Of a stretch of 64,000 nt of DNA, positions 264 to 60,200 are shown piece after piece (position 1 is the stretch's first letter; each line of letters opens with the position of its first letter). A program made the position numbers and the translations under genes. The notes under the pieces are model-generated. The model was not told the origin of the DNA. It made no database searches and worked only from the letters and a program-made list of their open reading frames with translations. The DNA comes from Octopus sinensis (taxonomy: Eukaryota), in the NCBI RefSeq assembly GCF_006345805.1, contig NC_043005.1, positions 4,154,001 through 4,218,000 on the forward strand, read 5' to 3'.

Positions 264-474
264 GGTCCCGGGTTGATTCGGGGTTAACCACAGTAAATAA
301 GGTACTCAATACATAGCAGAGTAAAATTAATTTATTATATAGAAGGAGCTTCTACAGGACTAGAACTGTTTCATTCAAGAGAAATCTTCAGGAAGCTAGT
401 TAACAAGAATTGTATTGGCATTTATACATTTAGGCAGGTTTAAAGGGGTGTTGGTGGGGGACTTTTTGGGGGTA

Positions 475-480
<6 letters not shown>
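251..480 (-). mobile_element. Penelope-like pseudo-LTR fragment, left arm of an inverted pair
   Basis: 330-480 is the reverse complement of 1607-1757. It contains a hammerhead motif at 347-397 (-). Confidence 0.7.
347..397 (-). ncRNA. Type I hammerhead ribozyme motif (copy 1)
   Basis: Reverse complement of 1690-1740, with the same helices and core. Confidence 0.7.
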
Positions 481-516
<36 letters not shown>

Positions 517-1320
517 TGTATGTATTTGTATGTAGGTGTACATGTATGTGTGTGTATTTATATTTATTGGTGTATATGTATAGACTAGCCGTCTAAGAGT
601 GTAGACATGAATATGTAGGTACGCGTACGTATGTGTATATACGTGAATGTATGTAGATGTATGTATGTATGAATATAACGCGTGCGTGCGTGTATGCGTA
701 TGAGTGTACGAATGAGTGAGTGTACGTGCTAAAGAGTGTGCGTGAGTGAATGAGTAATTGTTTTCCAGTAGACGGATAAATGGTCTGGCTGTCATAGCCA
801 AGATGTTTGTGACCAAGCGGCCAAGATAACAAAAGTAATAAACGAAGATAATAAAATTAAAATTAGGGAATGGGTCTGTATTTGTATATGTATATATATA
901 TGTGTGTATGTGTAGGTATGCATGGGTACACATATGTATATATATGTATATATATATATGTGTATGTATATATATGTGTATATGTATGTGTATGTATGTA
1001 TATATATGTGTATGTATGTGTATGTGTGGGTGTATATATATGTGTGTATGTGTATATATGTGTATATAGGGACTAGTGTGCTGTGTGTGCATGTGTGTGT
1101 ATGGATTTGTGTGTGTATGCGTGTATGTGAGTAGATGTGTGTGTATGTGTATATATATATTTTTCTGTGTGTATATGTATGTGTGGTCGTGTGTGTATAT
1201 ATACATGTGTGTATACGTGTATGCAAGTGAGTGTGTGTATGTATACATATATATGTGTATGTGTAGATATGTATATGTATGTGTGATTGTATATATATAT
1301 GTGTGTATGTGTAGAGGTAT
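481..1320. repeat. Compound (TA)n/(TG)n/(TATG)n microsatellite tract
   Basis: Directly visible. It explains the H/T/Y/I-rich and V/C/Y/M-rich ORFs here. Confidence 0.95.
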
Positions 1321-6886: not shown

Positions 6887-7440
6887 TCCTGGAAGGACAT
6901 CTCCTGGAAGGACCGAGTACCAAACGGAGTCATCCTAGAACAGACTAATATGCCAAGCATGCATGCCCTCCTCGTGCGGAGACGACTGCGCTGGCTCGGA
7001 CACGTCTGCCGCATGCAGGACGGTCGCACGCCTAAAGACATCCTGTACAGCGAACTCACCACGGGATCCCGACCCAAGGGACGTCCACAGCTACGATACA
7101 GGGATGTGTGCAAACGCAACCTGAGGACTGCCAACATCCGTGTGGACACGTGGGAGGTAACAGCTGCTGACCGCTCTGCCTGGCGTCGGACAGTGAGGAA
7201 AGGCGTTTCCATGGCTGAGGAAAGGAGAGCACAGCTGTGGTCGGACAGGCGGGACAGGAGGAGGACAACTGCAGCAACACCCCACACGTACCCATCGATG
7301 TTCGTGTGCAGCAACTGTACCAGGGACTGCCACTCTAGAATTGGACTGTTCAGTCACAGCAGACGCTGCTCATCATCAAAGTAGGCCCCACCCTTGGCGC
7401 GACCCATTGTCTATCAAGACAGACGGGAAGAGAGAGAAGA
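6887..7440 (+). mobile_element. 5'-truncated RTE (BovB-like) LINE 3' end
   Basis: Open frame ISWKDRVPN...RRRLRWLGHVCRMQDGRTPKDILYSEL...GRPQLRYRDVCKR...CSNCTRDCHSRIGLFSHSRRC, followed by a short 3'UTR and a (GA)-rich tail. Confidence 0.92.
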
Positions 7441-11511: not shown

Positions 11512-12969
11512 ATTCATCATCATCATCGTTTAACCTTCTCCTTCCATACTGACATGGATGGGACGGTTTGACAAGAGCCAGCCAGGCAGAAGCCTGCACC
11601 AGACTTCTGCAACTGTTTTGGCAGGATTTTTACAGCTGGATACCCTTCCTAACACGACTCAGCAGAGTGGACTGTAACTTAGTGGTTCAACAAAAGAGGC
11701 TAATAGAATAATTACTAGTGCTTTTTAGATGGCACAAACACAGGCAAGGTCAGTGTTGGTAAGGTTTTTATAGCTGGATGCCCTTTCAAATACCAACCAC
11801 TTTACAGTGTGGACCGGGTGCTTTTAAGTGGCACCTGCACCTTTCATTGTTGCTTAACTCCAGGTGAGACCTCATCCAACAGACCTATGACTAAAGGTGA
11901 GCTATTCTTCAGGCTGTACATCTGTTTTCATTTAAGATGTAAGGAGTGTGTGTGTGTGATTTGAGGTAAAGTCGTCAGGTTTTTCAAGCAGGTCGAAGTC
12001 GGTTCGTCAGACAAATGTTGGGTTTGGTTGGTATGTTCCTTTCTCTAAGGTGTGGTTCTTTAAACAGTAAATCAGGAAAAGTAATATAGATATGTTTTGA
12101 TAGGTAAACCAGTATTTTAGAAATTTCATCTGAAAACGCTGTAAAGCTGTTATACATACATGAGCATGTGTGTGTATGTATATAAACATAGATGTATATG
12201 TATGTATGTATATATAACATATATATATACCTATGTGTGTGTATGTAAGATATATATACATATATATATTCACATATGCATTACATCCATATACAAACAT
12301 AGAGATGAGTGTATATATGTATATACACACATACATGGATATATATATATAACACACACATGCATGTGTATTTTTCCTTTTCCTCTTTCTTCACCCTATC
12401 TGTTTACGCTTCCTTTACCGTTTCTGCTGCTGTTACTTCTACAATACTTATCCTTGATGTTGTTGTTTTCCTTGTTCTTGTTCTTGCTGTTATGTTATTC
12501 ATGTTGTTGTCAGTCTTGTTCTTCTTGTTGATTTAATTTCTATTTCTTCATCATCTTTTCCATCCTCATCATCTTCTCCACCTCCTCTTCCTTCTAAAAA
12601 TTTGTTTTGATACTTAAGCCAATGTTTAAGAGAAACTCTTCTGAATGGTATAATGCTGTAATGTATCTTACCCCTTTCCCATAACCTGTTTATTATTATT
12701 ATTATTATTATTATTATTTTCACTTTTTATTTTACATATTGCTCTGGCTTATCTTTTTGGTGTTGTTATTATTAATAGTACTTCTTGTTCGTGCTTTTTT
12801 CCCCCCACCATTCATTTTATATTACTTACTTAGTGTTTTTGTTTTTATGTTCTCCATGTACTATTCAACAAAAAACAATAAAAAGAAAAGGAAGAAATTG
12901 TATATTTTCAGAGCAACCAATGAGTAACTTCAAGAACACACCTACAAAATCAGTTTTCAATGTTTTCTG

Positions 12970-14493: not shown

Positions 14494-14937
14494 GTTAGTT
14501 AGTTAGTTAGTTAATTTGGCTCAAAAGCAAATAGCAAGGCCATGTAGGGGGACATGGAGTTAAGTACAGGGTGGTGTTCATGTAAAGAGTTCAGGCCACT
14601 TGAGGTCCAGGGAGGCTTTGAACAAAGCGGTCGTCGGCATCTTGACCATCTCGTCTGGCAGCTTGTTCCACGGATCCGCAACCCGGACGGAGAAAGCTCC
14701 TCTCCTTCGATTGAGATGAAATCGTCGCAGGTAGAGCTTTTCGGAATGACCCCGCAGCCGACGCTCTGGAGCAGGAGTGAAGAACAGCTCTTTCGAGAGG
14801 TTACACTTTCCGCTTATGATGTTGTGGGCGAGAATGAGATCACCACAGCGGCGGCGTTTTTCAAGAGAATAAAGGTCGAGCGTCCTCAGCCTTTCTTCGT
14901 AGGACAAATTTTTGAGACCATGAACCATGAACCATGG
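14494..14937 (-). mobile_element. 5'-truncated CR1/L2-type LINE 3' end with a (TAAC)n tail
   Basis: Uninterrupted frame LSYEERLRTLDLYSLEKRRRCGDLI...LRGHSEKL...FSVRVADPWNKLP...FKASLD. The (gtta)n tail is at 14494-14514. Confidence 0.92.
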
Positions 14938-15074
14938 CATTCTTTCGATATGAGTCCCATTTACATCACGTGTATTTGTTTACATTTGAAGAAGATCGTC
15001 ACTTTCCGTAAAATTTTATTTTTTTATATATGTGGGTTAGGGTTATGGTTAAGGGTGGAGGAAGAGTATCTTTT

Positions 15075-15752
15075 GGCGATCTTTCGTTTGTAGTAGCACG
15101 TTTCCGTCGATGATTTCCGTAAAAAACTTTTATTTTTTTACATATGGGCTTGCGGGAACATTTGAAGTAATGAGAGCGAAAGAGACTAAGAGAAAGCGAT
15201 TTTATGACGAGGGAATTTCTTTTGAAGTTACCGAAGCATTGATGTACATGTGCGTGTGTGTTTGATGGGGTGTGGGAGACAGACAGTATGTTGTGTAAGT
15301 GAAGTGCTTCTGTTAGTGTGTGTGAAGAGACAGAGAGAGTAATGTGTGAAAGAGAAAGAACTGACATTTTTTACTCGGTGTATGTGTATATGTATGTATG
15401 CATGTATGTGTGTGTGTGTATGTATCTATGTATGTGTGTGTGTATGTATCTATGTATGTGTGTATGTATGTATGTATGTATGGCCGATTCAGTGTACACT
15501 GAATCGGCCATACATACATAGATACATACACACATACATACACACACACATACATAGATACATACATACACACACACATGTACATCAATGCTTCGGTAAC
15601 TTCAAAAGAAATTCCCTCGTCATACAATCGCTTTCTCTTAGTCTCTTTCGCTCTCATTATTTCAAATGTTCCCGCAAGCCCATATGTAAAAAAATTAAAG
15701 TTTTTTACGGAAATCATCGACGGAAACGTGCTACTACAAACGAAAGATCGCC
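15075..15752. repeat. Long foldback: ~185-bp outer arms plus a central loopless palindrome
   Basis: 15075-15260 is the inverted copy of about 15565-15752. The palindrome tatgtatgtatggccgattcagtgt|acactgaatcggccatacatacata is centred at 15495/15496. Confidence 0.88.
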
Positions 15753-16079
15753 CTTTAAGATAAATGAATTTTTCATTAATTATACTCATTAATTTTATTT
15801 TAGCAATTTACATGATGAAGGTCGATAAGTTATCAACGATTCCAGAAGAGATCAATGATATAAGAAATGTGCCGACCCCTGGTTTTAGATTGTGTAGTCC
15901 TAGATAACCGCAGCTAGAAACAGCTACCAAATCTCCTTCAATTTAAAGAACTTGAAGAAAATAAAAATGCTAAAGTATTATCAAACTGTTTCGATGTGAA
16001 TAATTTCAATTCGTTTGTATACATCTTGTAAACATGTAGCCCCAACCAGTTGATTGTAGGCACACCTACACAACTGTGG

Positions 16080-20129: not shown

Positions 20130-20452
20130 AATTTCACCTAGAACTCCATCGGTTACGACGACGAGGGTTCCAGTCGATCCGATCAACGGAATAGCCTGCT
20201 CGTGGAATTAACGTACAAGTGGATGAGTATTCCACAGGCATGTGTGCTCTTAACGTAGTTCTAAGGGAGATTCAGCGTGACACTGAGTGTGACAAGGCCG
20301 GCCCTTTGAAATACGGGCATAACTCGTTTTTGCCAGCTGAGTGGACTGAAAGAACGTGAAATAAAGCATCTTGCTCAAGGACACAATGCACCATCAGGAA
20401 TCGAACTCACGATCTCGCGATCATGAACCGAATGCCCCTAACCACTAAGCCA
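20130..20452 (-). mobile_element. tRNA-derived SINE with a CORE-like central motif
   Basis: Minus-strand head gtggcttagtggttagggc...gagttcgattcc, then tgtgtccttgagcaagatgc. A plus-strand relative lies at 55218-55545. Confidence 0.75.
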
Positions 20453-21374
20453 CTAAGTGATCCAAATTGTCTCTGGGTGTTGGAATAGTTTCCATACACA
20501 ATAATATGGTGAACGTTTTTTTTCTTGAATTAACTCCCTTTTGTCCTCGACGGCGCTATATCGAATATGAGCCAACAAGGAAACCTCCATGTGGTCATTC
20601 GATCTGCAAGAAACAGCAGCTAAGCATAGCTCATATTATTCCCCATCGTCGTCATTTTCGTCATCGTCATTATCGTCGTCAACACCACCACCATCATCAT
20701 CTGTTTCCTACAATATGATTTCCAGCTTAGACACAAAGCCTGCAATTTTAAGTTCCTGATAATAAGATAGCTGGGTAACATGTGTCCTTGAGCAAGACAC
20801 TTCATTTCACATTGAACCAATCTACTCAGCTGTTACAAGTATCAGCCAACTACTGAAGCAACCGTCTCTCTTTCTCTCTCCTTTCCTCTCTCCCGTGATA
20901 TTTTGCTGGGTCAAGTATGAGGGGTTTGAGTGACTACATGATACATATTACCCACTTATATTCACATACCAATGATATCTGCTTGTAAATTTTCCTTCAA
21001 ATGTGCTGACTCTTTCCAAAACTGGGATTCGTTTTTGGCAAAATAGAATTGTACTGACTTCTAAAACACTATCATCTGCAAGCTAAATATAATATTAGTA
21101 AAAACGATTCCAAAACATTGTTGATAAAAATGTTAATGCAGAGTTTTGTCTATAAATACAGATTTCTAACAAGGTTAACCGTTTTGAGAGAGGAATAGTA
21201 AAGTACAGTCACCACTACTTGTGAGCGAATTCCGTTTTGATAACAAGTGTTATGCTTTTATTTGTAGCAGGAATGTGTAGCAATCAAACTGGGACCACTA
21301 TATCCATTGCAAAAACAGCAATTCAAGAATACAATTGTGATTTGCTAGAATATTACCAACACCATCAAAGAATC

Positions 21375-24098
21375 TGAAACGAACTTAGCGTGAGTGAATA
21401 GTCTTGTCTTGTACTTTCGGGGTACAAGAAAGCAATCACTCACAAGCCGTTGCTTTAATAATCCAGAATCTCTACTAGTCAGAAACAACAAGACGCAGAC
21501 GTAAAATATACATATAACTACTTTATTCTCTTTCTTGGTAACAATCAATAATAAGTGTGTTATCTGATGTCCTTGATTCTGGGCGCGCAAGGCTGAAAGT
21601 TAATAGATTGTAATATTTACAATGTCCAGCCGCTAAACCAGAAAGGGGTCAAGATGGCGTCGAACAGGAAAGTTGAATGTGGTCGGCAACAATTTGGTTA
21701 AAGGCATTCGGCCGACTGCTGCTATCAACCGGAGAGAATATATGCGTGACCGCCGCCTTCAATCGCTGGGTCCCAAGTCGCCGCTTGCTGCTGCTAGTGG
21801 TCAAACGTTCTACGATCCCCCTGCCTTGGCCAGGGTCGTGCTTCCGGTGGTTCGCGCATGCGCGAGAGGGCCCTTCCTTTCTGTGCCTTGGTAAAGGCAC
21901 CAACACGCGCGAAATACAAATGGACGGTGCGCGAGCGCGCACCGCTATAGGGTCACTACAGGCTCCCCTCCAGTGCGTACGCACGAAAGGAAACTTATTG
22001 TAGTGACTGCAAAACTCAAGGTGGACACCAGATAACCAAATAGCACACAACAATATAATGGCAAAATTTATAACATACACAAAAAATTTACTAAAGGAAA
22101 AAGAGAAAAAATACTCAATGAGCAAAAATCAAGAGTGCATGCATGAAAGTGTATACGTCACAAAGTATAGAGCCTTACGCTGAAGGGAGCGGAAGGAAAG
22201 CAAAAACTCACAGTTAATGAACCTAAACGAAATTAAAATCCAACTTCTCTAAAGGTGGTTGATCCTGCAAAATAGCAGTTAAATCAATTGCTGCAGGAGA
22301 GGAAATGGAATTGACAGAAGCTCGCTAGTAACACAAAAGGCAAAAGTGCAAACAGCTGGTGTGATGCGCGACACAGATAATTTTCTGTTAATTACGTGAC
22401 CAAACAGTGGTCTAACAGGGAAAAATAGTTACGCCTATAAATCGGCGCAGCGCATTTGAACATCCGACGTCTATGAGTCGGGAAAAGAATTAGGCTAACA
22501 CAAACGTGTTGCAAAAAAACAAGGCAATACACGTGCGAAGCAAAAGGCGCATGAAATGCAATAGTGCTTGCCAGACCAAAAAACAGCAAGAATATGCCAG
22601 TGGTTAAGCGATTATATGCCTCGTTCGTACAGGAACAAAGGTATGACATGCTGGCGCGTTATAATGGACAAACAACCCTCTCTATGTATACGTGACCGCT
22701 AGGGTCTATAGAAATGAGGGGTGTCCACAAAAGGCAAATTTAGCATGGAAAAAACAAGCGAGAAAAGCATGTGTGACGTATGTATGTGAGAGAGAGCATT
22801 TATGTGTGTGTACGTGTGTGCGACAGAAATACATACAAAGGTGAATGCGAGCAAAAATATAAAAGAATATACAGCGCATAGAAAAAATGTCTCTCGGGGC
22901 TATTCCAGACAAGAGTTAATTTACCAGTCTGTAATAGCCTGAAGTACAATAGCAGTTCGTTCTGTAACAGAAATGTTGAGATCACAAATGCAGATGCCGA
23001 TTGAACACATATCGTGTCGCGGTTGTGGCTTCAATGCTGTGACAGGTTAACTGGAACAGAAGAAATCTCGTAGATAGTGCTGGGCTGTGAATTCTTGGTG
23101 TGCTAATGCACAAACGGCAAGTGGACCAAACTTCCGTGAGTTGCTATGTACATCTTGGTGGAGGTCGACGGTGTTGAAAGGCGACGGTGGTGGTGGAAGG
23201 CGACTGTAGTGGACTTGGGACAACATCGTTCTTAGTGATGATGGCGACGAAGATAGCGACGACGTGAAGTAGAAAGACGACGATGATGATGACGAAGGTG
23301 GAGAAATAGCATCGTTGATATGATGGCGTTCGTCATCATGGCTGTAGAATAAGAAAGAGGCTCCTTCTACAACTGTTCGTGGTGGCCGGAAACAAATCGT
23401 CGAAAGATGATGCGTAGAGTTAAATCGTGTTCCGACTTCGCAGAAAAACTGGATTTTTTTTTGTTGATAAGTGATCTCTGGTTTTAGACCAGAATCATGT
23501 CGGGGTCACCAGTGAAACAAACTTAGCGTGAGTGAATAGTCTTGTCTTGTACTTTCGGGGTACAAGAAAGCAATCACTCACAAGCCGTTGCTTTAATAAT
23601 CCAGAATCCCTACTAGTCAGAAACAACAAGACGCAGACGTAAAATATACATATAACTACTTTATTCTCTTTCTTGGTAACAATCAATAATAAGTGTGTTA
23701 TCTGATGTCCCTGATTCTGGGCGCGCAAGGCTGAAAGTTAATAGATTGTAATATTTACAATGTTCAGCCGCTAAACCAGAAAGGGGTCAAGATGGCGTCG
23801 AACAGGGAAGTTGAATGTGGTCGGCAACAATTTGGTTAAAGGCATTCGGCCGACTGCTGCTATCAACCGGAGAGAATATATGCGTGACCGCCGCCTTCAA
23901 TCGCTGGGTCCCAAGTCGCCGCTTGCTGCTGCTAGTGGTCAAACGTTCTACGATCCCCCTGCCTTGGCCAGGGTCGTGCTTCCGGTGGTTCGCGCATGCG
24001 CGAGAGGGCCCTTCCTTTCTGTGCCTTGGTAAAGGCACCAACACGCGCGAAATACAAATGGACGGTGCGCGAGCGCGCACCGCTATAGGGTCACTACA
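21375..24098 (-). mobile_element. Non-autonomous LTR retroelement (Gypsy-type signals, no pol)
   Basis: Two 586-bp LTRs (21375-21960, 23513-24098) with TG...CA ends and about 5 substitutions. AATC TSD at 21371-21374 and 24099-24102. PBS at 23494-23511. PPT GGAGGGGAGCC next to the 3' LTR. Confidence 0.95.
23494..23511 (-). other. Primer binding site complementary to the tRNA-Trp 3' end
   Basis: Forward atcatgtcggggtcacca matches the metazoan tRNA-Trp 3' end as I recall it (ATCACGTCGGGGTCACCA) at 17/18 nt, and lies 1 nt from the LTR. Confidence 0.85.
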
Positions 24099-24753
24099 AA
24101 TCTGACTTTTCAAGACTTCATGTGAAACTGGATCTAACAGCATCATCTTTGGTGTATTTTTTTCTTAGCAAGACCACCACTATGTCTTCAGTGCATTTTA
24201 GCCACTAAAGACAGATGGTTGATGGTTGATGGTACACATCAAACTGGACACAGAAGCTGGCTAGAATGCTGTCACAATACAAAAAACACAATGGCTGGAT
24301 GGTGATAGCAACACAAGGATCAGTTAACATCATGACAGTGACTACTCTCATACTAAGTCCAGGAACAATGAGCTTCAAACTACCTCGGTTCTTATTGTTT
24401 GTAGTTATGATATTTTTTTGTTTATGATGTAAATTAATATTTTTTAAAATCAAAAATCTCAATTGTAACAAATTAATTGTTTTAGGTGCCTGTGTAGTTA
24501 CAAGCAGACATAGACATTTTCTTGGCCCTCTCAATATTTCACTCAATGGTGCATCCAGGATGTGGGAGCTGGGAGGAGAGAGAGAGAGCTGAGCTAGCAT
24601 CTGGTTGGTACTTATTGCTGAGTAGACTGAAGCAATGGAAAACGAAATGCTTTGTTGAAGGACAAAATACTCTGATTCAAGAATTGAACCTGTGGCCATA
24701 AGATCATGAACTGAACCATGTAACTGCTATGACATGCACCTTCACTTGAGGTG

Positions 24754-26290: not shown

Positions 26291-27124
26291 GATAGACAGA
26301 TAAATAGATAAAGGTATATCAAATACCATACAACATGGATTCTTTTTATTAAAATTTCTGTTCTCTGCTTCTTGAGGATGTATCATAACTACCAAATGGC
26401 AATTAAAACTAGTCTAGGAAAATATATGTACACGCACACACATGCACACACACACACACAAACACACACGTGCATACACACACACACACACACACAAACA
26501 TATACACGCACACACCTATATGTAAGGTACCTACCCATGGCACAAAATATGAATGCTATGTAGAGAAAGCCCCTTACTGTAATTTTAATTCTAATACCTT
26601 GATGCTAATTATATTCAAGGATGGGAGAAGGAAAAATAAAATTACCAGACAAACACATCATTTTGTGTTTGTTTTTCTTAGTATTGATAATATCTCCAGT
26701 TTCTTTTCTCTCTTTCACTCTCTCACACACACACGTATGTTTATGTGTGTGCATTTATATATATATATATATACACATACATACATACATACATATACAT
26801 ATACATATATATAATTATCATCATCAACTTCATTTAATATTCCTTCTTCCATCTTGGCATGAGTTGGACGTTTTGACTGCAATGCAGTGTCTGTATACAC
26901 ACACACACAAATATTATATATACATACATATATATATACACACACACGAATATATATATATATATATACACATACACACACACATATATTTATATATATA
27001 TACATACATATATTAATACACATACATGCACGCCCTGCCATCCACACAGAAATGCAAGTATATGAATATATATATACATAAACATATACACACACACACA
27101 CACACATATATATATATGTACATG

Positions 27125-29605: not shown

Positions 29606-30045
29606 TACAGAACCAGGCACCGGCTCTCATGGCTTCAGATCTTAACTGATTGGAAATGTTATCATGTACATTGTTTTGTCTTGGTATAAAAGATGGGCTA
29701 CAGCAAATATTCTGCTCAATTCCACAGATTTGCTTGTCAGTTGCTTGACCTTAACCAGTTGAGCATGTCCCTTGGTGGCTGACAATATGTGCATCTCTGA
29801 TCACGAGCAGAAGTAGTGGGGAAGCTTTATAGCCATGGGTTGAGAGGGATTCTTTGGGGTTTGAATGATTCACTTCTGGTAACATGGATGTTATCAATCA
29901 TTTATGAGCAGTAATACCAATGCTCATCATTAAATATAGGTAATACACCAGTGGATTCACTGGATACAAGTATCCCATAGAAGGTTGTTATAACCTCTAA
30001 CTTAACTCAATAATAATAATAACAATAATAATAATAATAATAATA

Positions 30046-30087
<42 letters not shown>

Positions 30088-30143
30088 ATGATGATGATAA
30101 TAATAATGATGATAATGATAATAATAATAATAGATAGATAGAT
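29528..30143. repeat. (ATA)n and (ATA/ATG)n microsatellites flanking a TAA-associated repeat (29605-29900)
   Basis: Directly visible. The inner segment is the reverse complement of part of 9900-10435. Confidence 0.85.
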
Positions 30144-31960
30144 AGATAGCATTCCCCACACATGGATCCTAGAAACACTAGCCATGAACAAGGTAGCATC
30201 AATAATCATAAAACATATAAAACACTCTATGAATAAATGGCAGACAGTGCTACAGCTCCAAACAAAAGAGGGACTCATAAAAACCAAAGCCATCTCCATT
30301 AGAAGAGGAATATTCCAGGGAGACACACTCTCTCCACTCCTTTTCTGCTTGGCACTGACACCTTTATCAAGCATGCTTAAACAGAACTGGATGTGGATAC
30401 AACTGTTACTATAAAACAATCAGTCACCTCATATATGGATGACCTAAAACTGCATGCTACAAATGTTAAGCAGCTGGAAACATCACTACAGACAGTACAT
30501 GGATTTACCAAGGAAATAAATATGAAATTTGACCTAGAAAAATGTGTCAGGGTAACCTTGAAAAGAGGAAAACTAGTTAAGAGTAGCAACATCACATTAG
30601 ATAAAGCAAATGAAATAAGAGAATTAGACCGAAGCCAGACATACAAATACTTAGGAATCAATGAACTAGATACGATTACAGATGAAAGAGAAAATATAAA
30701 AAGAATAGTATAGGCGAGTTAGATTAATACTGAAAACAGCTTAATGCGAAAAACAAGATAATAGATATCATCATTCTTGCCGTCCCAGTTATAAGTTACA
30801 GCTACAATATCCTTAACTGGACACTAAATGAACTAATCAAAATAGACAGGAAAACAAGAAAAATGACAGGATTTAGGATGCACCACCCAAAATCTGACAT
30901 AGAAAGGTTATATATATTACGTATAGAAAGTGGTAGAGGCCTTATACAACTAAAAATACTATTACAAAATAACCAGCATAGGACTACAAAAATACCTACT
31001 TCATAAGCAAGGAAAACTAATACAGATAACCACAAAACAAAAAACTGTTTTCAGTCTTTAAGGAAGTTGACAAATTGACAAATACAAACAAGAAGTCATA
31101 CTACCTAACAACTATGAAGAAAAAGAAGAAACAACAAAAGCTGTAAAACAAATGAAATCCAAGCGAAAACTAGAACAGCAACGGATCATGATAAAATGAT
31201 GGCAAGAAAAGCTCCTTCAAAGCAAATACTGGGCTAATCTAAACGCAAAAGAAATAGACAAAGCAAAATCCCAGCAATGGCTGAGAAGCTCAGGACTCAA
31301 AGCAGAGACAGAGGGATTTTTAATTGTAGCACAAGACCAAAGCCTCCCCACCAGAAATTACCAAAAACATAATAAAAAGAAACATAGCAAGTAACTGCAG
31401 AATATGTAGAGATGGACAAGAAACAATAAATCATATTATCTCTGGCTGCCCAGTCCTGGCTAAGAAGGAATATATTCACAGACATGACAGAGTTGGGACC
31501 TACACACACTGGAAGCTATGCCAACACTATAGAATAACAGAAAAAAGATGGTATAGGCACACTCCAGAAAAGGTCACAGAAAACGAGAAAGCAACCATAC
31601 TCTGGGATATGCCAATACACACAGATAGAGAAATTAAGGCCAACAGACCAGATATAGTTGTCAGAGATCATGAAGAAAAAAATGCTTTCTAATTGATGTA
31701 TCAACACCGGCAGATGACGACGTGTCTCTAAAAGAAATGGAGAAACTTTCAAAATACAAAGACCTGGAAATAGAGGTAACTAGAATGTGGAATCTAAAAA
31801 TAGAAACAATTCCTATCATTGTAGGTGCATTAGGCATGATAAAAAAATATACAGACAAATACATAACAAAAACACCAGGACTTACAAACACATATAACAT
31901 ACAGAAAATTGCACTCCTAGGCACTGCACACATCCTATGTAAAACACTTTCAATATTGTA
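30144..31960 (+). mobile_element. Decayed R4/Dong-clade non-LTR element (RT, zinc knuckle, restriction-like endonuclease)
   Basis: RRGIFQGDTLSPLLFCLAL, YMDD (30432-30443), CRIC...ETINHIISGC, RHD, and RPDIV...LIDV...K..KYKDL...IPIIVGALG. Many stops and frameshifts. Confidence 0.9.
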
Positions 31961-32799: not shown

Positions 32800-33510
32800 C
32801 ATAAAAGATGTATAAAAATAAAACAATAACAATATAACAATGAATAATTCCCCAAAAGAGGGAGTCTTCCTTGGGTTGCTCATGGAAACCCTATAAAAAG
32901 CACTGTCTCCCTGACCACTAAGTAAAATGCCCTCTTCACACTGTCCATCTCCAACTTACAGGTTCAAGTAGGTCTGTTCACTTGCATCATTCTGGCAACA
33001 TTCACCTACCTTTTAACAAAATTGCTGCGATGCAGAACTTTCTTTTTCATCCTCACTTTCCTTTTCAAGTGAAACTTGATAAAATTGATGAGGGCTTGGC
33101 CAAAGAGGTAAGTATCTGTCTTCAGCCCTTTCAATCTGGTCCACCACACAACCTCTTTTGCTAAGGCTGCCAGACAAAGAAAGACAGCCTGCCCTTCCTG
33201 GCAAAGGAAAACTGTGGGTTCAACATAAACCCACATATCGGAAATACATGGGCACTGGACGAGAACATGCAGAACAGTTTTGGCACTCTGTGTGCATCTC
33301 AGGCACGCCCAGCCGATGGCAGTTCCATACCTATAGAATTTATCCCAAACCAACAATGCTTCTGGTAGCACTGCCAGGCCAAGGATTTCTGGAAATTATT
33401 CATAGGCCTCATCCCAAAAGTCATCCAGAACAGACCAGCCAGTTGATTCTTATTGAAGCCCAGAGTCTTTATTAACCACAAAAGGTTTACATTAAGCAAA
33501 ACATTAAGGA
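32800..33510 (-). mobile_element. Decayed Tx1/L1-clade LINE 3' fragment
   Basis: Peptide LAWQCYQK/ALLVWDKFYRYG...CLRCTQSAKTVLHVLVQCPC, a CCHC-like C-terminal motif. Confidence 0.7.
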
Positions 33511-40582: not shown

Positions 40583-40788
40583 GTAACTACAATAGTTGAC
40601 GATATCGAAGTAGAGTAAAAGTAGTGTTTTAGGTTCTAGCCACACTCTTGTTGCACACACACACACACACACACACACACTAACAGTCACACCTGCATAC
40701 CTGCCATTCTTCCCTGAAGAAAGTCCTTCAGGTAATCTAATAACTAAAAAAAAAAACTCTACTAATTGTCTTCTTGTTTCTATTTCAG

Positions 40789-40850
40789 ACGAGAGAGATG
40801 CGGTACAGAAAAAGACTTTCACCAAATGGGTGAATAAACATTTACTTAAG
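40789..40850 (+). CDS. shot: Spectraplakin shared exon, start of calponin-homology domain 1: (D)ERDAVQKKTFTKWVNKHLLK
   Basis: Pyrimidine-rich acceptor ttcttgtttctatttcag|AC and donor AAG|GTATGT. The peptide is nearly identical to the plectin/dystonin/MACF1/Shot CH1 start DERDxVQKKTFTKWVNKHL. Confidence 0.96.
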
Positions 40851-53990: not shown

Positions 53991-56589
53991 ATTAGGCTAG
54001 CACCATAGTGGATAATGTAATTTACCTATTTGTACTTTTTGACAGCTAATCATTAAGCAATAAATCAGACCTGAAATGTATTTAAACATAAAGCTTCACT
54101 GTCACCATCATCATCGTTTAACATCTGCTTTCCATGCTAGCATGGGTTGGATGATTTTGACTGAGGGCTGGCGAACCAGATGGTTGCACCAGTCTCCAAT
54201 CTTGATTTGGCAGAGTTTCTACAGCTGGATGCCCTTCCTAACGCCAAACGCACGTGTGCGCACATGGAAGCATTAGCACTACATGTTATTAGATTTAATA
54301 AAAGTTGCCGGCTGGGACCATTAGCACACTGGACAAAATGCTTAGAGGCATTTTATCTGTCTTTACATTCTGAATTCAAATTCCGCCAAGGTCATCTTTG
54401 CCTTTCATCCTTTTGGGGCTGATAACATAAGTACCAGTTAAGTACTGGGGTCAGTGTAATTGAATTCCCCCTCCCCTCAAAAACTGCTAGCCCTGTGCCA
54501 AAATTTAAAACCATTATTATGCTTAATAACATATGCAGAGAGTTTAGCTTTTTTTCGATTAGGTTTTGTGAGAGATGCTAATACTCTGTTGCAACGAGTT
54601 TAATAATTACATTAATTATAAAATAACTATCCTCAGGGTGTGTGTGTCTGCATGTCTTTCATTTGGATTGTGCTCGTTACTCCAGCTTACCATTGGCACA
54701 CCTTATTTGTTATTATCATTATTATTAACTAATGTTATTGTTATTCGTGATTAATGTTATTAAAATTTAAAGAGGCCTGTTTGACGAGCAGTGTGTGTGT
54801 GTGTAGAGAGAGATCCACATACATTCAGCCTGAATGATTTAATCTGCTTTTGTGACTGCATTTCTAATGAGTTGTAGACTGCCAAAGTATTTCAATTAAT
54901 TCTTCTATATAATAAGGTCCCTGGAGGAATTGAGTGAAGTCATTTGTAACTCTAGATTGCGATATGCTGTCGTTTGGTCCCATGTCAACCTGGCTGGGGG
55001 TAAATCTAGAAACAGAACATTTTAGCTGCAACTACCCTACCCTACTCTTTTTCTTTTAAGTCATACTTTATCTAGGATGTATTATTCACTATCTTTTAGT
55101 ATGTATGTCGCTTGAGGTGAATTAGGTTGTTATTTTTAGCAGTTCAAGAAAGTACCTACAGGTTCCTTTGTTGGTTTATATCTATTAAGTTGGATTTTGA
55201 TCTTGTATGAGTGACGGCACGTAGCTAAGTGGTTAGGGGTATTCAGCTTGCGATTACAAGGTAGTGAGTTCAATACCTGGTGGGGCATTGTGTCCTTGAG
55301 CAAGACACTCTATTTCACATTGCTCCAATCCACTCAGCGGATAAAAATGAGTTGTACCTGTATTTTCAAAGGTCCATCCTTGCTACACTTTGTGTCATGC
55401 TGAATCTCCCTGAGAACTGTGTTATGGGTATATGTGTCTGTGGAATACTCTGCCACTTGCACATTAATTCACAAGTGGGCTGTTCTGCTGATCAAATAAA
55501 CTGGAACCCTCATCGTTGTGACCAGCAGATTACCAGTGAAGTTTGAGGGAAATTAGCCTGTTATTTTAAGCAGTTCACAAAGCTACATACAGGTTCCCTT
55601 GTTGGTGCTGATCTTGGATGACCTTTTTAGTTGAAATGAGTGATTTTGTTTAAGATTTAAATCTGACTCCTTTCATCTGAATCTGCTTCAAACCACTCCT
55701 GGTCCTGTGATGTGAATTTACTGTTTTAAAGCAATCTAAAACTTACATTGAAATTTCACTTTGTTCCAAACGCCAGCTTAATAAGGACAAACCTAGTTTA
55801 AGCTTAAAATGTGATTCAAGCAACGGCAATGTACTTTAGTAAATATGATAACGAAAGGGTTAAATATGAACACCTTACTACATAGGATGGTCTCAGGTAG
55901 GTTTCTGAATCTAATGTCGCTGTCATACATTGGAATCTTGTTTAACAAGTATTGGGTTTAGCTGAGGTTTTAACTTTGCCTACCACGTTCCACAATGTAG
56001 TTGAAGAGTTAACAAAACAAAGAGGTTCCTTGTTCTAATGTGTTGACTTCAAATATTTGTATATGTATTTTGGAATTTGACAGGGGGACAGAGAACAAAC
56101 AGTCTTTCTAGGCTATTCTAGACATGGCTGGTGGGGGTTAAGTAGATGTAGTTGGTATGACAATATTGGTGGATGTTCAAGTTAAGACAAAATGCCTTTT
56201 AGTATTTACTACATCCTTTATATTTTTCAAGTTAGCTTTGCTTTTTATTTTGTATGAGGATTGAAATAAATTGCTTGTATTTCTACAATGCACAAAATAT
56301 TTCAATTTTTTATATAAATCTTAATATTTAATCACAAAAATATGGTAGGATTTGTATTGATATACATGGAATGACTATAAGGGTCCAGGAGTGTAAAATA
56401 GGAATCAAAAGGGTCCTTAGGCAAAAAATGGTTGAGGTTTACTGGCAAGAGTTTCTACTACAGCTGGAGACACTTTCTCTCACTAACCTTTACTTGTTTT
56501 CCAAGTAATGTATATTTTTCATTTCACTCATAGACACATTGAAAATTGGAACTATGGCACTTTTCATTTGTCTGAGATTATAAACAGAC

Positions 56590-57290: not shown

Positions 57291-60200
57291 GGAGGAAAAT
57301 AAGTGTAGAAAGGAGTGGACGTTTTTGCAAAAACAGACTGGGGCCTGGTGCAGCATTCTGGCTTCCCAGATCCTGGTCGAACCGTCCAACCCATGCTACC
57401 ATGGAAAACGAACGTTAAACGATGATGATGATGATGATGATGATGCATTTCTCATGTAGAATTTAAACAAGCTGCTCTAAAACATTGCAGTGAATGGGGG
57501 GAAGCTTGGTTTCCAATATCTGCAAGCGTGTATGTTTATCAGGAGCTGGGCTTATTTGTCACCAACAATCACGAGTGGTCAGCCATCACACACACACACG
57601 TGTGTGTGTGTGTGTAGATAGATATAATGTCTCTTGCTCCCATAATTCACATCTACATATGATGGTCTGGCCAGTGTAAGCGTCCATGAATTAACATTTC
57701 ATTATCAAATACGCACTTCATTGCATCAAATCAATATTCCTTAGATGTATTCGGGGCTAAACACTAATGTTTTCACTATAAATAAGTTTAAAACTGCTCA
57801 ACAAACAGGTCTATTATTTATCTATCTACAGTGTTGACATTAATAACAACTGGCATTATTTATTTACCTATTTCGCTATTTTACACCCAGTTTTACTTGC
57901 TTACAGAAGTCGGATGTTGGAGTAAATGTTATTTACTGAAGGATGTCCTTTGTTCTGCTAAATACTCAACCATGAAATAAATGTGATTTATTTCTGTCGG
58001 TCAGGCAAATTAGCCCAAGCGTTGTTGCTTGACCCCAGGCCAGTCTGGATCAAGCTGACCCATTCAGTTTTGACCATTCTTACTGTACGTAATTGATTAC
58101 GTTCAATGATGTATCTAAAATTGATAGGTGTCACTTAAAGATTTAGTTGCTATTTTTAGCAGATCAAACAACTATACAGAAGGTCTCTTGTTGATTGAAG
58201 CAAGAGATATGTCTTTCTTAGTGGCTCAAAACCAGCATCTGTTAAATCTCTTCCTATGTCTTCCTGTTTTTTAATTAATAACGTAGGTCTATCATGAACC
58301 CCTAGGACTCATAAAACCAGAATTTAAACTGGTTTCCATGGTGTGTAAGTGATTGAGATTACAATACTCCCCCATGGACAAGATGCTAGTCCATCACAGG
58401 GTTAACTTCCTAATTATCACTGGGACTTGTTTACAGCTGAGTTAGCTGCAGCAATGTGAAATGAAGCGTTTTGATCAAGAACTCAACACACCACCCACTG
58501 CAGGAATTGAAACTATGATTGTAAGATTGTGAGTGCAACACCCTAACCACAAGGCCATGCACCTTCTTAATTACTAATAATGAAAAATATCTGAGGCATA
58601 TTTGAGGGAACTTGGCTCATGCTAGCATGGAAAACGGATGCTAAACGATAATAAAATTTTCTACAATTCAATTGTTTTACCTTTTTTTGTTGTGGCCCCT
58701 AAAAAAATCTAGGTTTTGGATCTGGCTCTTTTACTAAAAAAAGGTTTGAGAATTACTGATAAAGAGACTTCATAATTGACTCTTCTTTTTCATTATCTAT
58801 TTCTTTACTACCCACATGGGGCTAAACACAGAGGGGACAAACAAGGACAGACAAACGAATTAAGTTGATTACATTGACCCCAGTGCGTAACTGGTACTTA
58901 ATTTATCGACCCCAAAAGGATGAAATATGATGAAATATGGCTACGCATTTCACTCGGTGTGCTAACGTTTCTGCCAGCTCGTCGCCTTGTTTCCTTTTCC
59001 TTTTCATTATCACCATCATCATCATTGCTACCCTCATCATCTTTTAATGACCATCTTCCATGCTGGCATGGGTGAGATGGCTCAACAGGTCTGATAGGTC
59101 CAAGGAGTGTAGTGTGTGAGAGGCCAGAACAGGTTTCTTGCTGTAGAGAAGCTGCATTATTTAACTGAAACAACCAGCAGGCACCATTAATAACGATGAC
59201 GTACATCCATTCCAATAGTCTGGCATTAAGTGTTGTCCCTATTTTCATAAATTATCCATCTTTGCCAGAGTCTATTTATCACATTTAGTTTGCAGGCTCC
59301 CATTGCTATTAAGCTAATGGGTTTTTTGTGATAGGGTTTCAAGATGTTTCATCTGGATGCATCGCAATGTGAAGGTCATTCAGTGAGATTTTCATAGCTG
59401 TAGAATGTAAGTAAACCTACTTGAAATGATATTACAATGTGTGTTTGTGTGTGTGTATTATGTATATGGTAGGGTGAAGTGCTGGCCAGTATTGCTTGTG
59501 TATCATATGTTAACTTGACCTTGATTTTGGAATTGTGCCAAATATGCTTATCTACCTCTCACCATCATTATGACACAAAACATATTTATGCTTTATATTT
59601 AATTGTCATTACTGACATTATTAGTGCCATTGTGACAAATACAATTTATGGGACAAGAGTTGATATTTTCTTCAAATGGCTTTGTGAGTGAGTGTGTGTT
59701 TGTGTGTGTGTGTGTTACTTGAAGTGTTTCCAGCCCAACAGTTGTAAATAGTTTAACCGTGAGACCAATTTTTTCTCTCCCTGCCAACCTCGATTTGATC
59801 TATACTACTTTGTATCCATAGAGACTATTTTTTTTTTACTATCTCTAGGTGAAAGAAACATTTATAGAAGGGTGTACTCAGTTGAACCAAATCTAGCAGT
59901 ACTTCATTAGTACTCTCTGGATCCCAGAACTGAATTCCGGTTATCTTTTTATATCATTAGAACAGTTTTTTTTTAATGCATAAATACATATGCAGCAATG
60001 TGTGTGCGTATATTATTTTAGAGGCTGTTGGTGCCTGCATAACATTTCGTAAGGACTGCAACACACTTGAGAATCACTTTTATATGAGTCTCATGTTGTC
60101 AGTAAGTGATACTGATAGTGGTTGTGATGGTATTTAATAACTATGACAGTTAAGGAAGTAGTAGGGGTTATTGCAGGATGAGTGGTAGTAGTAGTAGAAT

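What the first reader, a model, noticed from the sequence alone, without database searches (positions are those of the whole stretch)
21371..24102. Very young tRNA-Trp-primed non-autonomous LTR element with a non-coding 1.55-kb interior
Seen: two 586-bp LTRs differing by about 5 transitions (~99% identical), an intact AATC TSD, an 18-nt tRNA-Trp-type PBS and a PPT, but no recognisable gag or pol. Known: 4-bp TSDs and these signals fit Gypsy-type elements, and TRIM/LARD elements are mobilised in trans. Inference: a recently active parasite of an autonomous Gypsy family. Cephalopod repeat content is usually described as SINE/LINE dominated, so this family may be undescribed. It lies about 15 kb upstream of the spectraplakin first exons.
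Basis: partly seen in the sequence, partly recalled or inferred. Interest (0 to 1): 0.7.

Follow-up and report, generated by a model that had tools for sequence, protein, structure and literature searches.

The report
Young non-coding LTR retrotransposon copy
This is a real, recently inserted 2.7-kb retrotransposon copy that carries every signal needed to be copied but no genes of its own, so it must borrow another element's enzymes; this is an ordinary, well-known kind of genomic parasite.

Summary
Two 586-bp LTRs (21375-21960 and 23513-24098) differ by 5 transitions and no indels. They are flanked by an intact AATC duplication. The element lies on the minus strand. An 18-nt primer-binding site sits one base after the 5' LTR and matches the human tRNA-Trp 3' end at 17 of 18 positions. 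A 9-nt polypurine tract precedes the 3' LTR.

The 1,552-bp interior has no gag or pol. A six-frame Pfam scan, an exhaustive HMMER search of its only long open stretch, zinc-knuckle motif scans and Rfam all found nothing.

It is best read as a non-autonomous LTR retrotransposon copied in trans. It is too large for a strict TRIM and too small for a LARD.

A tRNA-Trp PBS plus a 4-bp duplication is the published hallmark of the CsRn1 clade of Ty3/Gypsy. That clade is reported in 9 of 12 cephalopods, so it is the most likely helper. This link is inferred, not shown.

The host genome could not be reached. Copy number, the partner, insertion polymorphism and whether the family is already catalogued remain untested. 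It is a new member of a known kind, of modest interest.

The parts
21371..21374 (.). Target-site duplication AATC, left copy (3' side of the element in its own orientation)
   Evidence: Identical 4-mer abuts both LTR outer ends.
21375..21960 (-). 3' LTR, 586 bp; sense strand reads TGTAGT...GTTTCA
   Evidence: 586/586 alignable with the other LTR, 5 transitions, no indels; the aligned sense strands are shown.
21522..21527 (-). AATAAA in the 3' LTR (sense LTR positions 434-439), the putative polyadenylation signal marking the end of R; a second ATTAAA lies at sense position 502
   Evidence: Motif scan of the sense LTR. Its function is inferred and was not tested.
21963..21971 (-). Polypurine tract GGAGGGGAG, separated from the 3' LTR by CC
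   Evidence: Read directly from the sequence. A 12-nt palindrome GTGCGTACGCAC (21973-21984) lies just upstream of it.
21961..23512 (-). Non-coding interior, 1,552 bp; the sense strand is pyrimidine-rich (T 34.8%, C 25.1%) and CpG observed/expected is 1.03
   Evidence: No ORF longer than 85 aa. No Pfam hit in six frames. No CCHC or CHCC knuckle. No tblastn similarity to the gag pieces (DUF7041-type N-terminal region, CHCC region) of L025/L013. No Rfam family.
23050..23505 (-). Longest stop-free stretch on the sense strand, 152 codons, starting inside the PBS. Its only in-frame ATG leaves 59 aa. Judged to be non-coding.
   Evidence: Shuffle P is 0.035-0.06. An exhaustive HMMER search of 1.84 billion representatives gave two hits, both to translated tandem repeats with scores inflated by repetition. 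No Pfam family.
23494..23511 (-). Primer-binding site TGGTGACCCCGACATGAT, complementary to the tRNA-Trp 3' end; a 1-nt spacer (23512) separates it from the 5' LTR
   Evidence: Unique in the window. Matches the human tRNA-Trp complement at 17 of 18 positions. The same 18-mer sits one base after an LTR-like ...CA end in 19 of the 25 metagenome contigs that hold it.
23513..24098 (-). 5' LTR, 586 bp. The first ~300 sense bases are CpG-rich (29 of 37 CpGs) and are the putative U3 promoter.
   Evidence: The U3/R/U5 partition is inferred.
23875..23883 (-). CATATATTC, the only TATA-like motif in the sense LTR (positions 216-224); a candidate core promoter in the 5' LTR
   Evidence: Read from the sense LTR. 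No canonical TATAAA is present. Inferred only.
24099..24102 (.). Target-site duplication AATC, right copy

Best explanation
This is one copy of a non-autonomous LTR retrotransposon, 2,724 bp without the duplications, lying on the minus strand.

Inferred life cycle: RNA polymerase II starts in the CpG-rich U3 of the 5' LTR and ends after the AATAAA in the 3' LTR. The RNA has no gag or pol, so it is packaged by Gag and copied by reverse transcriptase supplied by an autonomous element. Host tRNA-Trp anneals to the 18-nt PBS and primes minus-strand DNA. The GGAGGGGAG tract primes the plus strand. The helper's integrase joins the TG...CA ends across a 4-bp staggered cut, which produced the AATC duplication.

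The helper is most likely a Ty3/Gypsy element of the CsRn1 clade. The insertion is young, with 5 substitutions between the LTRs.

Shown here: the anatomy, the absence of coding capacity and the youth of the copy. Inferred: transcription, trans-mobilisation, the identity of the helper, and that the RNA template was already non-coding when it was copied.

The confidence of 0.85 is for the non-autonomous LTR retrotransposon reading; the CsRn1-clade helper sub-claim stands at about 0.55.
For: All structural hallmarks sit at exact, mutually consistent positions on one strand: LTRs, TG...CA termini, 4-bp TSD, PBS one base from the 5' LTR, and PPT two bases from the 3' LTR.

The PBS is tRNA-Trp type, matching 17 of 18 positions of a printed human tRNA-Trp complement.

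No gag or pol was found. The six-frame Pfam scan was empty. The 152-codon open stretch has no credible homolog among 1.84 billion proteins and no Pfam family. There is no CCHC or CHCC motif and no tblastn similarity to CsRn1-like gag pieces.

Each LTR has diverged by only about 0.4% since insertion, so the interior cannot have decayed from coding sequence in place. The template was therefore already non-coding.

Youth is supported by 99.15% LTR identity and by CpG observed/expected of 1.03-1.08 against 0.54 for the window.

[quoted passage not shown] Of the metagenome contigs with the identical PBS 18-mer, L025 has DUF7041 starting 22 nt after the PBS, a CX2HX9CX3C motif, and RNase H followed by integrase. 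L013 also has DUF7041. L004, L012/L023 and L013 have related gag sequence by tblastn. L001 holds a ~730-bp non-coding element with the same PBS and a 4-bp TSD; its LTR is about 74% identical to the LTR of gag-bearing L013. This is a precedent for such a pairing.
Against: Only one copy is visible, so neither a family nor a helper has been seen.

The LTR reading frame found nothing in 5.8 billion proteins, and LTR patterns are absent from the scanned collections. Those collections do not hold the host genome, so this absence is uninformative.

A 4-bp TSD and a Trp PBS are typical of CsRn1 elements but not exclusive to them. My metagenome scan asked only for this PBS variant.

The sense strand of the interior is pyrimidine-rich, whereas retroelement sense strands are usually A-rich. 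This is unexplained.

The promoter and polyadenylation assignments rest on weak motifs; there is no canonical TATA box.

RNA folding of the U5-PBS-leader region is only mildly better than shuffles (z about -2 to -2.7) and is not strand-specific.
Confidence: 0.85

Rival explanations
1. It is a one-off internally deleted copy of an autonomous element, not a member of a propagating non-coding family. The deletion would have arisen either by template switching during reverse transcription or by loss after insertion.
For: Only a single copy is seen. The interior starts with an unusually long open stretch of 152 codons (shuffle P about 0.04-0.06) in the position where gag would begin.
Against: A deletion this recent should leave intact, recognisable gag or pol fragments in 1.55 kb, and none is found. 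In the CsRn1-like comparator L025 the DUF7041 gag domain begins 22 nt after the PBS. The equivalent 450 nt here has no such domain. The remaining ~1.1 kb is dense with stop codons in all frames.
Confidence: 0.12
2. It is a non-autonomous LTR element whose helper is not a CsRn1-clade Gypsy element but a BEL/Pao, Copia, another Gypsy lineage or an endogenous retrovirus.
For: TSDs of 4-6 bp occur in all LTR superfamilies (general knowledge). tRNA-Trp is also used by avian alpharetroviruses: one search shows the same PBS type used as an ALV/EAV primer. The element itself has no coding sequence that could assign a clade.
Against: The published clade description links the Trp PBS with the 4-bp TSD. 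The clade is common in cephalopods. All recognisable coding partners of this exact PBS 18-mer in the metagenome hits carry related gag sequence of the kind that in L025 goes with the CsRn1 CHCC motif.
Confidence: 0.25
3. It is not a transposon insertion at all but a local tandem duplication or an assembly artefact that happens to give two direct repeats.
For: None beyond the bare presence of two direct repeats.
Against: TG...CA termini, an exact 4-bp TSD, a tRNA-Trp PBS unique in the window placed one base from one repeat, and a purine tract next to the other repeat all lie on the same strand. The five substitutions between the repeats argue against a collapsed or duplicated assembly.
Confidence: 0.01

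Closest known systems
TRIMs (terminal-repeat retrotransposons in miniature), e.g. biv-TRIM of bivalves (PMC6934838) and animal TRIMs reviewed in PMC10886601
   Same: Non-autonomous LTR elements with two terminal repeats, an interior bounded by a PBS and a PPT, no coding capacity, and mobilisation in trans. Animal examples give 4-bp TSDs and show PBS similarity only to Gypsy elements.
   Different: TRIMs are defined as shorter than 1 kb with repeats of 100-250 bp. This element is 2,724 bp with 586-bp LTRs. Unlike biv-TRIM it has a canonical PBS. Unlike Cassandra, Helenus, Ajax and retrozymes it has no small-RNA or ribozyme module.
LARDs (large retrotransposon derivatives; Kalendar et al. 2004 and the Wicker et al. 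2007 classification, both cited from memory)
   Same: A sizeable non-coding interior between full-sized LTRs, presumed to be mobilised by a Gypsy partner.
   Different: LARDs are several kilobases larger, more than 4 kb by the usual rule. Their defining conserved, structured interior cannot be assessed from one copy. Folding here is only weakly better than shuffles.
CsRn1 clade of Ty3/Gypsy (CsRn1, PwRn1, AgCR-1 to AgCR-14; PMC2582038)
   Same: tRNA-Trp PBS, 4-bp TSD, LTRs of a few hundred bp, and recent activity with LTRs more than 97% identical. The clade is widespread in cephalopods.
   Different: Members of that clade encode a conserved Gag with CX2HX9CX3C and a full Pol. This element encodes neither, so it can only be a dependent of the clade, not a coding member.
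TRIM-like element in metagenome contig Ga0123355_10001019 (L001 5359-6085, minus strand)
   Same: The identical 18-nt PBS with a 1-nt spacer, a 4-bp TSD (CACT), TG...CA LTRs, a G-rich PPT and no coding capacity. Its LTR is about 74% identical to that of a gag-bearing element with the same PBS (L013).
   Different: It is about 730 bp with ~230-bp LTRs. It comes from an unidentified other host. It shows no sequence similarity to the window element beyond the PBS.

Membership tests
LTR retrotransposon (structural definition) | Two direct long terminal repeats ending 5'-TG...CA-3' | tested here: met
   586-bp LTRs, 99.15% identical; the sense strand reads TGTAGT...GTTTCA.
LTR retrotransposon (structural definition) | Target-site duplication of 4-6 bp | tested here: met
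   AATC on both sides.
LTR retrotransposon (structural definition) | PBS complementary to a tRNA 3' end next to the 5' LTR, and a PPT next to the 3' LTR, on the same strand | tested here: met
   The PBS matches the tRNA-Trp complement at 17 of 18 positions and lies 1 nt from the LTR. A 9-nt purine run lies 2 nt from the 3' LTR.
Autonomous LTR retrotransposon | Open reading frames for Gag and Pol (PR, RT, RNase H, IN) | tested here: not met
   No ORF longer than 85 aa and no Pfam family in six frames. No homolog for the 152-codon stretch.
TRIM (strict definition) | Total length under 1 kb and terminal repeats of 100-250 bp (PMC6934838, PMC10886601) | tested here: not met
   2,724 bp in total; LTRs of 586 bp.
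TRIM (strict definition) | No coding capacity; interior bounded by PBS and PPT | tested here: met
LARD | Large size (more than about 4 kb; from memory of Wicker et al. 2007) | tested here: not met
   2,724 bp.
LARD | Interior conserved among copies, with conserved RNA structure | not testable with these tools
   Only one copy is available. Single-sequence folding z-scores are mostly between -2.7 and +1.5 and are not strand-specific.
TR-GAG type non-autonomous elements | Retains a gag ORF only | tested here: not met
   No Pfam gag family, no DUF7041, and no CCHC or CHCC motif.
TRIMp3 (Cassandra/Helenus/Ajax) and retrozymes | 5S rRNA-like or tRNA-like sequence, or a hammerhead ribozyme, inside the LTR | tested here: not met
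   No tRNA by ARAGORN. No Rfam match at E up to 1 across 21000-24500.
CsRn1 clade of Ty3/Gypsy (as helper lineage) | tRNA-Trp PBS | tested here: met
   clade property as stated in PMC2582038.
CsRn1 clade of Ty3/Gypsy (as helper lineage) | 4-bp TSD | tested here: met
   clade property as stated in PMC2582038.
CsRn1 clade of Ty3/Gypsy (as helper lineage) | Gag with the CHCC signature CX2HX9CX3C | tested here: not met
   No such motif in any sense frame. The element is therefore not a coding member of the clade and could only be a dependent of it.
CsRn1 clade of Ty3/Gypsy (as helper lineage) | LTR, PBS or leader sequence shared with an autonomous member in the same genome | not testable with these tools
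   The host genome is not in the searchable collections.

The most novel reading that the evidence does not exclude
This copy belongs to an undescribed, currently mobile, mid-sized (about 2.7 kb) non-autonomous LTR family that hijacks CsRn1-clade Gypsy machinery. Its non-coding interior was not derived from the helper by deletion; the pyrimidine-rich sense strand hints at a captured or antisense origin. The AATC insertion is still polymorphic and lies inside or upstream of a plakin-type, CH-domain cytoskeletal gene.
Probability: 0.25. Interest if true: 0.4.

Novelty: new member of a known kind. Interest (0 to 1): 0.22.

Why it matters
Non-autonomous LTR elements are well documented in plants but only sparsely in animals. 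[quoted passage not shown]

A clean, young copy with a canonical tRNA-Trp PBS is a useful seed for curating the host's repeat library and for finding an active CsRn1-type helper. It could also serve as a presence/absence marker near a large cytoskeletal gene.

It does not change any concept. The mechanism is the textbook one, and LTR/Gypsy elements are already annotated in coleoid genomes (PMC8967140).

Tried and rejected
1. Other copies in the window: blastn of the LTR and the interior found only the element itself.

2. Paralogous empty site: the joined flanks match only a ~60-bp dispersed repeat about 540 bp from the junction. Nothing spans the junction.

3. LTR reading frames as handles to other copies: the search for homologous proteins gave nothing. 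Exact look-ups of the LTR ORF and of the flanking 164-aa ORF gave nothing.

4. Reaching the host genome through a LINE-like ORF (6950-7384): the best hits are only 65% identical, so the host is not in the protein collection. The third protein search was not spent, because the only gene exon in the window is 21 aa.

5. Collection scans: the PBS-junction pattern found 25 metagenome loci, none related to this LTR or interior. LTR-start patterns found nothing in genome contigs or viral contigs.

6. Hidden gag: the 152-codon open stretch was tested by shuffles (P about 0.05), by exhaustive HMMER and by Pfam. The two HMMER hits are translated tandem repeats with per-repeat E about 0.01. Rejected.

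7. Small-RNA-derived or ribozyme-bearing LTRs: rejected.

8. RNA structure of the leader and interior: weak and not strand-specific, so no conclusion was drawn.

9. The fact that all 5 LTR differences fall in the R-U5 half (sense positions 292-580) was considered. It is not significant (two-sided P about 0.06).
Full report
**Observation**

I read 21200-24300, ran the repeat finder and made a global alignment of the two repeats.
- The LTRs are 21375-21960 and 23513-24098, each 586 bp, with no indels.
- They differ at five sites, all transitions: 21381 G/A, 21471 T/C, 21573 T/C, 21626 C/T and 21669 A/G. One of these (21381) is at a CpG.
- Both LTRs begin TG and end CA.
- AATC abuts both outer ends (21371-21374 and 24099-24102).

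**Orientation and priming signals**

The signals place the element on the minus strand.
- Read in sense, the 5' LTR is the reverse complement of 23513-24098. One spacer base follows, then TGGTGACCCCGACATGAT at 23494-23511.
- This 18-mer is the only match in the 64-kb window even with 3 mismatches allowed, against 0.03 expected by chance.
- It equals the complement of the human tRNA-Trp 3' end including CCA at 17 of 18 positions. That sequence is printed in bioRxiv 10.1101/400127. The same vertebrate version is used as an ALV/EAV primer in PMC5029493.
- At the other end, GGAGGGGAG (21963-21971, minus strand) lies two bases from the 3' LTR.

**Interior**

The 1,552-bp interior (21961-23512) has no start-codon ORF above 85 aa. 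A Pfam scan of all six frames, with stops masked, found nothing better than E = 0.067.

The longest stop-free stretch on the sense strand is 152 codons (23050-23505, starting inside the PBS).
- That length is reached in 3.5-6% of composition-preserving shuffles.
- Its only in-frame ATG leaves 59 aa.
- An exhaustive HMMER search against 1.84 billion representative proteins returned two hits. Both are translated tandem repeats in which a weak per-unit match is multiplied (pairwise E about 0.01 for P0101). I therefore treat them as artefacts.

Further checks were also negative.
- No CCHC or CHCC zinc-knuckle motif occurs in any sense frame.
- The 152-codon stretch has no Pfam family, and the element shows no tblastn similarity to CsRn1-like gag pieces.
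- Rfam finds no RNA family on either strand and ARAGORN finds no tRNA. The element is therefore not of the Cassandra, Helenus, Ajax or retrozyme type.

**Age and state at insertion**

LTR divergence is 5/586 = 0.85%. If one assumes 1-5 x 10^-9 substitutions per site per year, T = K/2u gives roughly 0.9-4 million years. That rate is my assumption; no cephalopod rate was checked.

A second, independent sign of youth is CpG content. Observed/expected is 1.08 in the LTR and 1.03 in the interior, against 0.54 for the whole window.

Each LTR has changed by only about 0.4% since insertion. The interior cannot have decayed from coding sequence in place, so the RNA that was copied was already non-coding. 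This is the main argument against a plain one-off deletion. I still give that rival about 0.12 because only one copy is visible.

**LTR anatomy (inferred)**

In sense orientation:
- The first ~300 bases hold 29 of the 37 CpGs, and they include a 20-nt GC palindrome (LTR positions 17-36).
- The only TATA-like motif is CATATATTC at positions 216-224.
- AATAAA is at 434 and ATTAAA at 502.

This suggests U3 of about 1-245, R up to about 455 and U5 to 586. None of this was tested. Folding of the U5-PBS-leader region and of the PPT-proximal region is only mildly more stable than shuffles (z about -2 to -2.7) and is not strand-specific.

**Which helper?**

A TSD length and a PBS cannot by themselves prove a superfamily, but the combination found here is informative.
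- Thomas-Bulle et al. report the CsRN1 clade in 9 of 12 cephalopods (PMC6238403).

I tested the association independently.
- A metagenome scan for 'CA, any base, then this exact 18-mer' gave 25 loci.
- Nineteen of them look like LTR-end/PBS junctions in AT-rich, eukaryote-like DNA. Six are chance hits inside GC-rich coding regions.
- None resembles the window element beyond the PBS.
- Wherever coding sequence downstream of the PBS is recognisable, it is the same related gag, with Pfam DUF7041 called in the two loci scanned:
  - L025 has DUF7041 starting 22 nt after the PBS, the motif CWYHQKFEDEARKCNPPC 777 nt downstream, and RNase H followed by integrase.
  - L013 has DUF7041.
  - L004, L012/L023 and L013 have related gag sequence by tblastn.
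- L001 holds a ~730-bp non-coding element with ~230-bp LTRs, the same PBS, a G-rich PPT and a 4-bp TSD (CACT). Its LTR is about 74% identical to the LTR of gag-bearing L013.

L001 is therefore a small non-autonomous element whose LTR resembles that of an element carrying this gag. It is a precedent for the relationship proposed here.

I put about 0.55 on a CsRn1-clade helper and about 0.25 on some other LTR lineage.

**Classification**

TRIMs are defined as under 1 kb with 100-250-bp repeats (PMC6934838; PMC10886601). LARDs are, from memory, over 4 kb. This element fits neither strictly. It is a mid-sized non-autonomous LTR retrotransposon. The kind is well known, so I rate it 'new member of a known kind'.

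**What could not be done**

- The LTR frame has no homolog in 5.8 billion proteins.
- Exact look-ups of LTR and flank ORFs fail.
- A LINE-like ORF from the window finds nothing above 65% identity.
- LTR patterns are absent from the prokaryote genome and viral collections.

Copy number, solo LTRs, the helper, polymorphism and Dfam/Repbase status therefore remain open. The claims that the element is 'undescribed' and a 'family' are untested.

**Context**

The window is AT-rich, full of microsatellites, and contains LINE fragments.

The only recognisable gene piece is a 63-bp exon at 40788-40850 (+). It encodes [21 protein letters not shown], the start of a calponin-homology domain. It has a clean acceptor (tttcag|) and donor (AAG|gtatgt).
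- It lies 16.7 kb from the element, on the opposite strand.
- It is an internal exon, so the element may be intronic rather than upstream of the gene.
- The motif fits spectraplakins, but from general knowledge it is shared with other CH-domain proteins.
- Neither 'spectraplakin' nor 'cephalopod' was verified.

Published surveys agree that octopus repeats are mostly SINE (about 40%) and LINE (about 30%). They also already annotate LTR/Gypsy in coleoids, at 11-12% of repeats in Euprymna scolopes (PMC8967140).

**Verdict**

It is an ordinary kind of element and of modest interest.

Noticed in passing
window 40788-40850 (+): A 63-bp exon encoding [21 protein letters not shown], the N-terminal motif of a calponin-homology domain. 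It has a polypyrimidine/cag acceptor and an AAG|gtatgt donor. It is the only CH-domain exon in the window, and it is an internal exon rather than a first exon, so the LTR element 16.7 kb away on the opposite strand could be intronic.
   Followed up: partly
L001 5359-6085 (minus strand), contig Ga0123355_10001019: A TRIM-like element of about 730 bp: ~230-bp TG...CA LTRs that are 95% identical, the same tRNA-Trp PBS 18-mer, a G-rich PPT and a 4-bp TSD (CACT). Its LTR is about 74% identical to the LTR of the DUF7041-gag-bearing element in L013 and about 70% to that in L004. This looks like a non-autonomous/autonomous pair in another, unidentified host.
   Followed up: partly
L025 4050-7179 (+), contig JAAGOD010050263.1: A degenerate CsRn1-like Gypsy element. 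It has the same PBS, a DUF7041 gag piece starting 22 nt after the PBS, the CX2HX9CX3C motif, then RNase H and integrase. The gag is broken into several short frames.
   Followed up: partly
L009/L015, L002/L007/L014 and L010/L022: LTR-end/Trp-PBS junctions in which no retroelement ORF was recognised downstream: L009/L015 and L002 have no open stretch of 150 codons or more within their remaining 4-6 kb, L007 and L014 hold only about 2.0 and 0.6 kb downstream, and in L010/L022 the only long ORF is a mariner-type transposase. These may be decayed, truncated or further non-autonomous Trp-primed elements.
   Followed up: no
window 21925-21944 and 24063-24082; 21973-21984: A 20-nt GC-rich near-palindrome (CGGTGCGCGAGCGCGCACCG) lies near the U3 start of each LTR. 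A perfect 12-nt palindrome (GTGCGTACGCAC) lies just upstream of the PPT. Their function is unknown.
   Followed up: no
window 21961-23512: The sense strand of the interior is pyrimidine-rich (T 34.8%, C 25.1%). This is the opposite of the A-rich sense strands usual for retroelements. The interior may derive from something captured in antisense orientation.
   Followed up: no
window 6950-7384 (+), 14578-14940 (-), 33006-33371 (-): Fragments that look like LINE-type C-terminal ORFs. The first has 100 homologs up to 65% identical, including proteins annotated in Littorina saxatilis and in vertebrates. The third has a sub-threshold zf-RVT hit. The second is judged LINE-like by eye only and has no Pfam hit.
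   Followed up: partly
window 20781-20838, 20334-20385, 55289-55346, 58425-58485: Four copies, 77-86% identical, of a dispersed repeat of about 60 bp, probably part of a SINE. One copy lies about 540 bp from the insertion site.
   Followed up: no
P0101 and P0102 (hits): Proteins that are translations of long tandem repeats gave whole-sequence E-values of 1e-16 and 1e-4 against a non-coding query, because a chance per-unit match was summed over 3-17 units. This is a caution for reading such scores.
   Followed up: yes
window 430-1248, 12007-12531, 15313-15792, 26470-27107, 29997-30419: Long 'ORFs' that are merely translations of TG/TA-type microsatellites and of an ATT/ATA-type run (poly-Ile). 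The window is very rich in simple repeats.
   Followed up: no
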